A stretch of 64,000 bases of DNA. Origin: Blastocladiella emersonii ATCC 22665 (lineage: Eukaryota; Fungi; Blastocladiomycota). The stretch's first letter is position 1, and each line of letters starts with the position of its first letter. The notes under the pieces are model-generated. The model was not told where the DNA came from and made no database searches. It worked only from the letters and a program-made list of their open reading frames with translations. Of the stretch, positions 4,258-58,274 are shown piece after piece. A program made the translations under genes and the position numbers. The stretch lies in contig JANHCV010000004.1 of assembly GCA_025594325.1 (NCBI GenBank), positions 1,426,001-1,490,000 of the forward strand, in the 5' to 3' direction.

Positions 4258-4273
4258 TCACATGATATCGCGA
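4258..4273 (+). promoter_or_regulatory. Putative promoter element TCACATGATATCGCGA (E-box-like plus CGCG)
   Basis: Lies in the divergent intergenic region 4174-4604. An identical 16-mer is at 58045-58060 and a variant (GCGATATCACGTGA) at 56207-56220. Confidence 0.35.
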
Positions 4274-55838: not shown

Positions 55839-56336
55839 GATGGCGGGAGGCGAGTTGGAGGCGGCGAGGGGCGAAGGGGCGAAGGGGCGAACGTCGCCGG
55901 TAGCGAGGAGTGCACGTTCAAGCGCGTGCGAGTTCCATAGTTTGCAGGAGCTGCGTGTGCTTCATTGACAGCAATTCTACCGCCGTGTCGTTTGCATGTA
56001 GAGCGAGCGAGCCGCAATCTGGTGCTGGTGCGCGCCGGCCAGCTGAGAGTATTCTCGTCGTCTTCCTTCAGATTTGGAGACGGGTGCGCGGTCTCCCACC
56101 CGTTGCGCGAAGAATATCAGCGCGCGCGTGTGCGACTGAAATTAGCGATTCCCGGCGGGTCGGCGCAACACGCGTCGCGCGTTTTGCCTCGCGCGGGAGA
56201 CGCGTTGCGATATCACGTGAGAGGCGCGCTGATCGCGTTTGCCCTGCGCGGCGCAGCGCAGGCCGCGTTGTGCGCGCACCTTGGGCGGCAAGCTCGCCGC
56301 CATCCGCCCGCTCCCTCCTCTCCCGTCGCTCCGAAA

Positions 56337-57860
56337 ATGAGCGAGTCACCGCCATCCGAGCAACGTATCGACGACGACAACGCCACCATGCCCGCGACGA
56401 CGCGCAGCCAGGACGCGCCGACCCGAGTCAAGGCCGCGCGCCCCGCCGAGGACGAGCCCGAGACCGCCGCGGGTCCCGCGGCCAAGAAGCGCCGCGCCGC
56501 CGCCATCAAGAAGGAGGTCAAGCAGGAGGTCAAGGTCGAGCCCAAGCAGGAGATCAAGGTGGAGCCCAAAGCGGCCAAGGTCAAGCAGGAGTCGAAGCCC
56601 GCCAAGGTCAAGCAGGAGGCCGGCAAGAAGAAGAAGAAGGCCAAGGCCAAGGCCAAGCCGAAGAAGCGCCCCGCTGCCGACGGCGACGAGTCGGACGACG
56701 GCGACTACGACGGCGGCGGCGGCGCGCGCAAGACCAAGGCCAAGCAGCCCGCGGCGTTCGCCTTCGACGACGAGTTTGGCGCCGAGTTTGAGGAGTTTGG
56801 CGAGTTTGACGAGGACGAGTCGGGCGCCTCGACCCGACTCACGATGCCCAACCCGGTCGTCCCGGTGCCGGTGCCCGCGGACCACGTCAAGATCGTGTCG
56901 TGGAACGTCAACAGCATCACCACGGCGTTGGAGCGGGGTACGCTTTCCATGTCTCACCGCATCGCCTCCACGAGTTGCGACTCACACCGTCTCTCGCGCG
57001 GCGCGTAGGTTTCATCGAGTACCTCGACGGCGAGCAGCCCGACGTGGTCTGCCTGCAGGGCACCAAGATCAGCGGCGAGCCCGAGGAGCTGTCGTTCGAC
57101 GACCTGTACCCGTACCAGTTCTGGTCCACGAGCACCAAGTCGCGCGGGTACTCGGGCTCGGCGATCCTGAGCAAGCTCGCGCCGGTCGGCGACGCGCGGT
57201 ACGGGCTGCCCGACGAGTACGGCATCGACGACGCGCGGTGCCGCGTCATGACGCTCGAGTTCGCCAAGCTCACGCTCGTGTCCGCGTACGCGCCCAACGC
57301 CGGCATGAAGAACCTGCAGAACCTCGACGACCGCCGCGAGTGGAACCTGGCCATGGAGCAGTACCTCGCCGCACTCGACGCCGTCAAGCCCGTCGTGTAC
57401 TGCGGCGGCCAGAACGTCGCGCACGAGGAGATCGACCTCTCACGTCCCAAGCAGAACGAGAAGTGCGTGCTCGCGCGTCGCTCACCCGCCGCCGTGATCC
57501 TCGACTAACTCTCGCACCTACCGCATCTCCAGGACCGCCGGCCACTCGGCCAAGGAGCGCGAGGATATGACGCGGCTCCTCGACGAGGTGCACCTGGTCG
57601 ACGTGTGGCGCCACCAGCACCCGGGTGACCAGCGCTTCTCGTACTTTGGGTACCGCAACGACTGTCGCTCCAAGGGGATCGGGTGGCGCCTCGACTCGAT
57701 TCTCGTCAGTGAGCGGCTCGTCGAGTGCGCGGACAAGAGCGCGGCCGTCGGCGCGTGCACGATCCGCGACGACTGCTGGGGCGCCAGCGACCACGTCCCG
57801 CTCGTCCTCACTGTGCCGCGCGCGCTGTTCGAGGCGTCGCCGGCGGCTGCCGAGGAGTGA
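56337..57860 (+). CDS. ExoIII/APE1-family AP endonuclease homologue with catalytic substitutions; exons 56337-56937, 57009-~57462, ~57531-57860
   Basis: KIVSWNVNS, PDVVCLQGTK, GYSGSAILSK, YAPNAG, CGGQNVAHEEIDL, GWRLDSILVS, SDHVP. Lys-rich N-terminal extension. Confidence 0.88.
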
Positions 57861-57959
57861 TTTTGGGGGAGTGTGTGTGTGTCGTTTGTATCGTATATCC
57901 CACGACACGAGTGATTTCTACTTGACGACACGCCGCCGCTCGACATGGCCGTCGCGAGC

Positions 57960-58053
57960 GGCGATTCCTATTCTGCCCCCCAGCCGGTTATCCTGCCCCC
58001 CGCGGCTATTCTGCCCCCTCGGCTATTCTGCCCCCAAGCCACGGTCACATGAT
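57960..58053 (+). repeat. Left TIR made of 4 tandem TAT(T/C)CTGCCCCC units
   Basis: Units start at 57969, 57989, 58007, 58024 (spacing 20/18/17), followed by GGTCACATGATA. Confidence 0.9.
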
Positions 58054-58274
58054 ATCGCGACGCGTCGATTTCCCGCGACCGGCCGCCGTTATCACGGCCC
58101 CGTCGACTTGTACTGACTCCGCAAAAAATCACACACATAAAAAAGAGTTCATGCAACGTGATGAAAAATGCTGAATGAAAAGCTCACGCGAAGCGATGTC
58201 GCTGCCAAATGAAAAACAGAAGCGTATTTATTCAACGGGTCGACAGGCTCAACATTTCTTGCTCTTATCCAACT

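What the first reader, a model, noticed from the sequence alone, without database searches (positions are those of the whole stretch)
56337..57860. APE1/ExoIII homologue with both key catalytic acids replaced by Gly: candidate pseudo-nuclease
Seen: LQGTK (GGC at 57059-57061) where the family has LQETK, and CGGQNVAH (GGC at 57407-57409) where it has CGDLNVAH. The AGFT motif reads AGHS. Established: these are human APE1 E96 (metal binding) and D210 (essential for catalysis). WNV, YAPN, NVAH, WRLD and SDH are intact, the ORF and splice sites are intact, and codon bias is strong. Inference: a maintained, catalytically dead protein that may bind or shield AP sites or act as a scaffold, with a Lys-rich N-terminal extension.
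Basis: partly seen in the sequence, partly recalled or inferred. Interest (0 to 1): 0.72.

Follow-up and report, generated by a model that had tools for sequence, protein, structure and literature searches.

The report
APE1-type repair gene lacking catalytic acids
The only APE1/exonuclease-III-type DNA-repair gene annotated in the water fungus Blastocladiella emersonii is intact and looks well kept, but it has glycine in place of the two acidic residues needed to cut DNA; its closest sequenced relatives keep both, so it is either a newly evolved non-cutting DNA binder or a gene that has just started to decay.

Summary
A three-exon gene (56337-57860, +) encodes the protein that NCBI lists as H9P43_004269 of Blastocladiella emersonii ATCC 22665. 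It is an APE1/Xth-type AP endonuclease homologue. It has Gly (GGC 57059-61) at human APE1 E96 and Gly (GGC 57407-09) at D210.

- **Uniqueness:** none of 366 fetched relatives has either replacement in an intact protein.
- **Sequence support:** contigs of three sequencing runs, all from one sample, match the gene with no differences.
- **What is kept:** the other catalytic motifs and most family-conserved DNA-contact positions. GC3 is 0.94, against 0.63-0.67 in the introns. Both introns sit at the same position and phase as in the B. britannica orthologue. The predicted fold is a confident APE1 fold.
- **What fails:** B. britannica, Catenaria and Paraphysoderma all keep E and D, so the change is specific to one lineage. 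No Allomyces orthologue and no second B. emersonii copy were found, and there is no RNA evidence.

Best reading (about 0.5): a maintained protein that cannot incise but still binds DNA, a natural analogue of the laboratory E96Q/D210N mutant. Main rival (about 0.3): a gene recently disabled by missense changes. This is a moderately interesting new variant of a known kind.

The parts
56207..56220 (+). 14-nt motif GCGATATCACGTGA, 117 nt upstream of the first ATG. It is a candidate promoter element.
Evidence: The window has three exact copies of GCGATATCAYGTGA where 0.04 are expected by chance.
56337..56937 (+). Exon 1. It encodes a disordered N-terminal extension of about 180 residues and the first strand of the nuclease fold (the SWNV motif). 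The N68-equivalent Asn codon is at 56904-56906. The annotated alternative start is at 56388.
   Evidence: Translation. The P0001 record starts at the second Met. No Pfam or NCBIfam family matches the extension.
56505..56618 (+). Lys-rich segment with six hydrophobic-K-x-E motifs (IKKE, VKQE, VKVE, IKVE, VKQE, VKQE), followed by a K/A run that looks like a nuclear localisation signal.
   Evidence: six motifs. Only 19 of 5000 shuffles of the tail reach six. Seven of eight orthologue tails checked have none and one has a single motif.
56757..56819 (+). Acidic, Phe-rich stretch (alternating F with D/E) between the basic tail and the nuclease domain.
   Evidence: in P0001 residues 126-150, K+R = 1 and D+E = 11.
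56938..57008 (+). Intron 1 (GT..AG), phase 1, inside the Gly codon that follows 'ER'.
   Evidence: It has the same position and phase as intron 1 of the B. britannica orthologue L001:6001-7184.
57009..57462 (+). Exon 2, the core of the EEP fold. It holds both Gly replacements and the intact YAPN and NVAH motifs.
   Evidence: Pfam PF03372 at E 3e-09. TIGR00633 at 108 bits. APE1 chains in the PDB at E about 1e-30.
57059..57061 (+). GGC = Gly at the position of human APE1 E96, the Mg2+ ligand (LQGTK where the family has LQETK).
   Evidence: E in 361 of 367 sequences, G only here. No read differences.
57407..57409 (+). GGC = Gly at the position of human APE1 D210, the residue that activates the water. 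The next residue is Gln where 84% of the family have Leu.
   Evidence: D in 363 of 367 sequences. No read differences.
57463..57532 (+). Intron 2 (GT..AG, with a CTAAC branch site), phase 2, inside the Lys codon before TAGHS.
   Evidence: It has the same position and phase as intron 2 of the B. britannica gene.
57533..57860 (+). Exon 3. It holds AGHS (57537-57548, family AGFT), WRLD (57684-57695, D283 equivalent), SDH (57786-57794, D308/H309 equivalents) and the TGA stop at 57858-57860.

Best explanation
This is the B. emersonii orthologue of the fungal and animal APE1/Xth-type AP endonuclease, and it seems to be the only such gene annotated in this species. The gene is real and structurally intact. 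Its product should fold as an APE1-like domain behind a long charged, disordered tail.

It has lost the Glu that holds the Mg2+ ion and the Asp that activates the attacking water. It should therefore be unable to incise abasic sites, or trim 3' ends, at useful rates (inferred from mutagenesis of human APE1).

The residues that grip DNA and the flipped-out abasic sugar are almost all kept. The likeliest activity is therefore lesion or nick binding without cutting, like the laboratory E96Q/D210N 'dead' APE1, which still binds AP-DNA. A tail-mediated nuclear or nucleolar role is also possible. Real AP incision would be left to Apn2- or Apn1-type enzymes.

Shown: family, orthology, the two replacements, their uniqueness, and gene integrity. 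Inferred: loss of activity, retained binding, and continuing selection.
For: - **Family and fold:** (pLDDT 93, pTM 0.92; TM 0.83-0.90 to APE1).
- **Orthology:** the gene tree places it with B. britannica and Catenaria. Both introns are shared in position and phase with B. britannica. The Blastocladiales-type C-x-IRDD insert before SDH is shared.
- **Sole copy:** a Catenaria query and a blastoclad profile query list no second B. emersonii protein.
- **Uniqueness of Gly/Gly:**
- **Selective retention:** N68, Y171, N174, N212, D283, D308 and H309 are kept, and so are K98, W119, Y128, R156, N226, K276, W280, R281 and L282. 46 of 54 near-invariant columns are kept.
- **Signs of continuing constraint:** GC3 is 0.94 (0.97 in exon 2) against 0.63-0.67 in its introns and 0.71 in the neighbouring transposon ORF. 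Splice signals are canonical. The branch length (0.79) is no longer than the path to B. britannica (0.85), which keeps its active site.
- **Time since the change:** the E to G(GGC) change needs at least two nucleotide steps, so it is not a single fresh mutation.
- **Literature:** dead APE1 binds AP-DNA in the same nanomolar range as wild type, and the Lys-rich N-terminus drives sliding on DNA (PMC13221653). Nuclease-independent roles run through the N-terminal tail and W119 (PMC9561277).
Against: - The Gly/Gly state is seen in one species only. The three nearest sequenced relatives keep E and D, so there is no conservation evidence for a new function.
- There is no RNA evidence. No RNA run holds the stretch, and the published annotation text does not mention RNA-seq.
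- The eight changes at near-invariant columns are not significantly concentrated on catalytic residues (2 of 9 catalytic against 6 of 45 others).
- An intact ORF means little in a genome with 67% G+C, where spurious ORFs above 350 codons are common.
- High GC3 decays slowly, so it cannot exclude a recent inactivation.
- Some conserved positions near the DNA interface are altered (K78R, G155C, F232H, F285I).
- I recall from memory that a dead APE1 that binds AP sites tightly acts as a dominant negative in human cells. A protein like that would be expected to be costly.
Confidence: 0.5

Rival explanations
1. The gene was recently disabled and is on its way to loss. APE1-type activity became dispensable in this lineage because Apn2/Apn1-type enzymes do the work. 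Two missense changes knocked out catalysis, and the gene has not yet picked up frameshifts or lost its codon bias.
For: - The change is confined to one species, and all relatives keep E and D.
- No Allomyces orthologue turned up with a blastoclad profile, which hints that the gene is dispensable in this family.
- B. emersonii has the most deviations at near-invariant columns (8 of 54).
- Both inactivating changes involve A to G at codon position 2, the direction favoured in a GC-rich genome (inference).
- Earlier notes report an APN2-type gene elsewhere in the genome (s1-273349, s1-266391; unchecked).
- A transposon lies about 90 nt after the stop codon (s1-076900; the depth jump at 57924 fits).
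- From memory: ascomycete yeasts lack this gene type, and the S. pombe laboratory strain carries a mutated apn1.
Against: - GC3 of 0.94-0.97 equals or exceeds that of neighbouring genes.
- There is no stop or frameshift in 1383 nt, and both introns have canonical signals.
- Seven other catalytic residues and nearly all DNA-contact residues are intact.
- The branch is no longer than that of B. britannica.
- The Gly codon at E96 is the preferred GGC, which requires two steps.
Confidence: 0.3
2. It is still an enzyme. In this reading it is a phosphodiesterase or nuclease with a remodelled active site or a different substrate, using the remaining D283/D308/H309/N212 set, and the two Gly open room for a bulkier ligand or a differently placed metal.
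For: Five of the EEP motif positions remain (WN, the N of DxN, D, DH, plus Y171/N174). Gly, rather than the isosteric Gln or Asn, at both sites enlarges the pocket (inference). Neighbouring changes (L211Q, F232H) add polar groups near the site.
Against: [quoted passage not shown] E96Q and E96Q/D210N lack both APE1 nuclease activities (PMC9561277). EEPD1 lacks the motif-iv Asn and is inactive on every DNA substrate tested (PMC12988330). No acidic residue replaces either acid in the alignment.
Confidence: 0.15
3. It is a sequencing or assembly error at the two codons.
For: Two of the three supporting runs may be the data from which the assembly was made.
Against: Three runs (word depth 26, 137 and about 4) give contigs with zero differences over the whole gene. 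Two independent A to G errors, each falling on a catalytic codon, are very unlikely. Several nearby conserved positions also differ.
Confidence: 0.03

Closest known systems
Human APE1 (APEX1) and its fungal Xth-type orthologues (for example Catenaria anguillulae ORZ37713.1 and the B. britannica protein P0028)
   Same: - Same fold (Foldseek TM 0.83-0.90).
- 37-47% identity over the domain.
- Same WN, YxPN, NVAH, WRLD and SDH motifs and same DNA-contact residues.
- Shared intron positions with B. britannica.
- A charged, disordered N-terminal tail, as in APE1.
   Different: - Gly replaces the Mg2+-binding Glu (E96) and the water-activating Asp (D210).
- Other changes are L211Q, F232H, G155C and F285I.
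- One residue is inserted after NAG.
- The tail is much longer (about 180 residues) and has six hydrophobic-K-x-E motifs and an acidic Phe-rich stretch.
Laboratory APE1 E96Q/D210N ('ED', 'dead') mutant (PDB 5DFJ, 5WN2)
   Same: The same two positions are neutralised. The best PDB sequence match of the domain is in fact such a mutant chain (5wn2). The mutant lacks endonuclease and exonuclease activity but still binds AP-DNA (PMC9561277, PMC13221653).
   Different: This one is natural, and it has Gly rather than the isosteric Gln/Asn. Binding is untested here.
EEPD1, a metazoan EEP-fold pseudonuclease (PMC12988330)
   Same: It is an EEP-fold protein that has lost residues needed to start phosphodiester cleavage but keeps the phosphate- and metal-binding motifs. 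It is proposed to act as a DNA binder or protector.
   Different: EEPD1 loses the Asn of the DxN motif, is an obligate dimer with HhH domains, and its degenerate site is conserved across metazoans. The protein here loses the Glu and the Asp, is an APE1-subfamily orthologue, and the loss is seen in one species.
Crc of Pseudomonas, an ExoIII-fold catabolite repression protein
   Same: It is an ExoIII/APE1-like fold with no nuclease role. It shows a weak sequence match to exon 2 (E 1e-4).
   Different: It is bacterial and works with Hfq on RNA. It is only distantly related and is not an orthologue.

Membership tests
APE1/Xth (exonuclease III-type AP endonuclease) family, by descent | Sequence match to the family models above the curated cut-off | tested here: met
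   TIGR00633 on exon 2 alone scores 108.2 bits against a cut-off of 99.05. Exon 3 adds 71.5 bits. PF03372 matches.
APE1/Xth (exonuclease III-type AP endonuclease) family, by descent | EEP four-layer alpha/beta sandwich fold closest to APE1 | tested here: met
   AF2 model with pLDDT 93.2 and pTM 0.92. The top 47 Foldseek hits are APE1 chains with TM 0.79-0.90.
APE1/Xth (exonuclease III-type AP endonuclease) family, by descent | Orthology to fungal APE1-type genes (tree position, shared gene structure) | tested here: met
   It is sister to B. britannica + Catenaria with 90/58 support. Both introns have the same position and phase as in the B. britannica gene.
APE1/Xth as an active enzyme | Motif ii: Q-E, where the Glu binds Mg2+ (APE1 E96) | tested here: not met
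   The motif reads Q-G, with GGC at 57059-61.
APE1/Xth as an active enzyme | Motif iv: D-x-N, where the Asp activates the water (APE1 D210) | tested here: not met
   The motif reads G-Q-N, with GGC at 57407-09. The Asn is kept.
APE1/Xth as an active enzyme | Motifs i, v and vi, plus Y171/N174 (WN, D283, D308-H309) | tested here: met
   All are present.
APE1/Xth as an active enzyme | Mg2+-dependent incision 5' of an abasic site | not testable with these tools
   This needs a biochemical assay of the recombinant protein.
EEP-fold pseudonucleases (EEPD1, Crc) | EEP fold with loss of residues essential for catalysis | tested here: met
EEP-fold pseudonucleases (EEPD1, Crc) | The degenerate site is conserved among orthologues, as evidence of a maintained non-catalytic role | tested here: not met
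   B. britannica, Catenaria and Paraphysoderma keep E and D. No relative shares Gly/Gly.
EEP-fold pseudonucleases (EEPD1, Crc) | Demonstrated lack of nuclease activity together with a binding function | not testable with these tools
   This needs incision and EMSA assays.

The most novel reading that the evidence does not exclude
B. emersonii has converted its only APE1-type repair nuclease into a dedicated protein that binds lesions or nicks without cutting them. This would be a natural counterpart of the dominant-negative E96Q/D210N mutant. It would be tethered or regulated through a new tail that is rich in SUMO-consensus motifs and has an acidic segment. It would shield abasic sites or strand breaks, or signal from them, for example in the dormant zoospore nucleus, while Apn2/Apn1 carry out incision.
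Probability: 0.2. Interest if true: 0.75.

Novelty: new variant of a known kind. Interest (0 to 1): 0.45.

Why it matters
APE1's E96 and D210 are among the most conserved residues in DNA repair. In 366 relatives sampled here they are never replaced in an intact protein.

A natural orthologue that lacks both but keeps the DNA-binding surface would test three things directly:
- what an AP-site-binding protein that cannot cut does in a cell;
- whether the nuclease-independent roles reported for human APE1 (tail-driven DNA scanning, condensates, checkpoint signalling) can sustain a gene on their own;
- how a repair enzyme turns into a pseudoenzyme.

If it turns out to be a gene at the very start of decay, it marks the first step of the APE1-type gene loss seen in other fungal lineages. 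That would be useful, but ordinary.

Tried and rejected
- **RNA evidence.** The contigs kept both introns. Expression is therefore untested.
- **A separate active AP endonuclease.** I could not show that the genome encodes Apn1 or Apn2. Only this 64-kb window is readable, the protein searches list only the best 120-150 hits, and no tool gave me an Apn1 or Apn2 query sequence. Only unchecked earlier notes point to an APN2-type gene.
- **Word search with P0001.** This search missed Catenaria and B. britannica. They appeared only when Catenaria or a blastoclad profile was the query. Absences in these lists are therefore weak evidence, and this includes Allomyces.
- **dN/dS.** Not attempted. The nearest relative is only about 46-50% identical in protein, so synonymous sites are saturated.
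- **Accelerated evolution.** Rejected as a clear signal. The terminal branch (0.79) is 2.3 times the median but matches the B. britannica path.
- **D70N as a third lost acid.** Rejected. N is the commonest residue at that position.
- **APE1 redox function.** C65 is Val here and in the fungal orthologues shown in the alignment, so this is not a candidate function.
- **Synteny with B. britannica.** Its neighbours (Metallophos and HIT genes) are not next to the gene in this window.
- **Literature.** A search for Blastocladiella plus 'AP endonuclease' found nothing.

Full report
**1. What is in the sequence**

Reading 56000-58200 and translating the three frames gives a three-exon gene on the + strand:
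- exon 1, 56337-56937;
- intron 1, from GT at 56938 to AG at 57008;
- exon 2, 57009-57462;
- intron 2, from GT at 57463 to AG at 57532, with a CTAAC branch site;
- exon 3, 57533-57860, ending in TGA.

The coding length is 1383 nt, or 460 codons.

Searches used each exon by reference. They also used the database's own record P0001, which the exhaustive protein search returned as a 100% match to exon 2. P0001 is 443 aa and starts at the second Met (56388). It shows exactly the splice joints I had inferred (…ALERG/FIEY… and …NEK/TAGHS…). NCBI names it hypothetical protein H9P43_004269 of Blastocladiella emersonii ATCC 22665. That locus-tag series belongs to the published assembly (PMC9730499).

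**2.

- Exon 2 matches PF03372 and the exodeoxyribonuclease III model TIGR00633 at 108 bits, above its cut-off even as a fragment.
- Exon 2 matches zebrafish and human APE1 chains at E about 1e-30. The residue-by-residue alignments put LQGTK on LQETK and CGGQNVAH on CGDLNVAH.
- So GGC 57059-61 stands at E96 and GGC 57407-09 at D210. AGHS aligns with AGFT.
- The best PDB sequence match of the whole domain is a crystallisation mutant in which these same two residues were neutralised (5wn2).
E96 is E in 361, D in one, gapped in four, and G only here. D210 is D in 363 and G here, plus in two truncated fragments that simply end at that point.
- N68, Y171, N174, N212, D283, D308 and H309 are all present.
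- D70 is Asn here, but Asn is the commonest residue at that position in the family, so it is not a third loss.

**3. It is not a sequencing error**

Contigs from three runs of one sample (word depth 26, 137 and about 4) cover the gene with no differences. They contain both introns, so they are DNA. Two of the runs may be the source of the assembly. The low-depth third run still spans both codons.

**4. Orthology and the key test**

*Nearest relatives.* They are only 44-47% identical over the domain in the MAFFT alignments, and at most 50% (Paraphysoderma) over the trimmed tree columns. They are:
- Paraphysoderma sedebokerense (P0151);
- Catenaria anguillulae (P0010);
- Blastocladiella britannica (P0028).

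*Support for orthology.*
- In an IQ-TREE analysis of 36 sequences, the B. emersonii protein is sister to B. britannica + Catenaria with 90/58 support.
- It shares the Blastocladiales-type insert with C-x-IRDD before SDH.
- Both of its introns lie at the same position and phase as in the B. britannica gene (L001:6001-7184).

*Result of the test.* All three relatives, and every other orthologue examined, keep LQETK-type and GDLNVAH-type motifs. The replacements arose on the B. emersonii lineage after it split from the sampled relatives.

*Other copies.* A search with the Catenaria protein and one with a profile of the four blastoclad proteins found no second B. emersonii protein of this type and no Allomyces orthologue. 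The word-indexed search demonstrably misses some true relatives: one search missed Catenaria and B. britannica. These absences are therefore only suggestive.

**5. Maintained or decaying?**

*For maintenance:*
- GC3 is 0.94 overall and 0.97 in exon 2. Its own introns are at 0.63-0.67, credible neighbouring genes at 0.85-0.97, and the adjacent transposon ORF at 0.71.
- Splice signals are canonical.
- 46 of 54 near-invariant columns are retained.
- Nearly all family-conserved DNA-contact and lesion-pocket positions are retained: K98, W119, Y128, R156, N226, K276, W280, R281 and L282.
- The model is a confident APE1-like fold (pLDDT 93; Foldseek TM 0.83-0.90).
- The terminal branch (0.79) is no longer than the path to B. 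britannica (0.85), whose active site is intact.
- E to Gly(GGC) needs at least two nucleotide steps.
- A recurrent 14-nt motif, with three copies in the window against 0.04 expected, sits 117 nt upstream of the ATG.

*Against:*
- The state is known from one species only.
- There is no RNA evidence.
- B. emersonii has the most deviations at near-invariant columns (8, against 6 for the next sequences). These also hit G155, K78, F232 and F285.
- The losses are not statistically concentrated on catalytic residues.
- Intact ORFs are cheap in a genome with 67% G+C.
- Codon bias decays slowly.

A recent inactivation therefore cannot be excluded.

**6. Mechanism**

- Asp210 is proposed as the general base, and Glu96 (with Asp70) coordinates Mg2+ (bioRxiv 10.64898/2026.05.11.724140).
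- E96Q and E96Q/D210N lack both AP-endonuclease and exonuclease activity (PMC9561277).
- The dead double mutant was assayed for AP-DNA binding over the same nanomolar range as wild type. E96 and D210 are reported to promote APE1's release after cleavage, and the disordered Lys-rich N-terminus drives sliding along DNA (PMC13221653).
- Nuclease-independent signalling through the N-terminal tail and W119 has been reported (PMC9561277).

By inference, the B. emersonii protein cannot incise. It probably still recognises AP sites or nicks, and it may act through its tail.

The tail is unusual. It has a basic segment with six hydrophobic-K-x-E motifs; only 19 of 5000 shuffles reach six, seven of eight orthologue tails checked have none and one has a single motif. 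An acidic Phe-rich stretch follows.

**7. Comparison and verdict**

By descent this is a member of the APE1/Xth family. As an enzyme it fails two defining motifs.

It resembles the known EEP-fold pseudonucleases EEPD1 (PMC12988330) and Crc. It lacks their hallmark, a degenerate site conserved across orthologues.

My estimates are:
- about 0.5 for a maintained DNA-binding protein that cannot incise;
- about 0.3 for a gene recently disabled under relaxed selection. Earlier scan notes, unchecked, report an APN2-type gene elsewhere;
- about 0.15 for residual or altered catalysis;
- about 0.03 for an artefact.

Novelty: a new variant of a known kind. Interest is moderate (0.45). It would rise sharply if sister isolates share Gly/Gly under purifying selection, or if the protein binds AP-DNA without cutting it.

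Noticed in passing
window 56505-56618 and 56757-56819: The N-terminal extension has six hydrophobic-K-x-E motifs (the SUMO-acceptor consensus) within 38 residues. Seven of the eight orthologue tails checked have none and one has a single motif. An acidic stretch alternating Phe with Asp/Glu follows. No family model matches either segment.
   Followed up: partly
window 4258-4271 (-), 56207-56220 (+), 58045-58058 (-): There are three exact copies of GCGATATCAYGTGA where 0.04 are expected by chance. One lies 117 nt upstream of this gene's ATG and one lies inside the neighbouring transposon end. Read depth also doubles around 56148-56221. The motif is a possible shared promoter element.
   Followed up: partly
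window 57924-58200: Contig depth jumps about tenfold (26 to 286 in run X1), and single-copy contigs end at 57987, only about 90-130 nt after the gene's stop codon. This fits a multi-copy transposon end (tandem GGGGGCAGAATA-type units) inserted just downstream. It may have replaced the gene's 3' UTR or polyadenylation region.
   Followed up: partly
L001:6001-7184 (B. britannica) and the tree: In this gene tree B. britannica groups with Catenaria (100/95), not with B. emersonii. The two 'Blastocladiella' proteins are only about 44-46% identical. Either the genus is not monophyletic or this gene is misleading.
   Followed up: no
orthologue proteins P0002-P0010 and P0152-P0157; window about 56838-56850: Fungal APE1-type proteins share a short N-x-T-(M/L)-P motif about 20 residues upstream of the nuclease domain. 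It is absent from the animal sequences. B. emersonii keeps only L-T-M-P. Its function is unknown.
   Followed up: no
window 56666-56739: A GGC/GAC-rich coding stretch (the D/G-rich segment of the tail) attracts contigs from elsewhere in the genome. Depth is up to three to six times the local level and there are several loose ends, so it acts as a low-complexity repeat.
   Followed up: no
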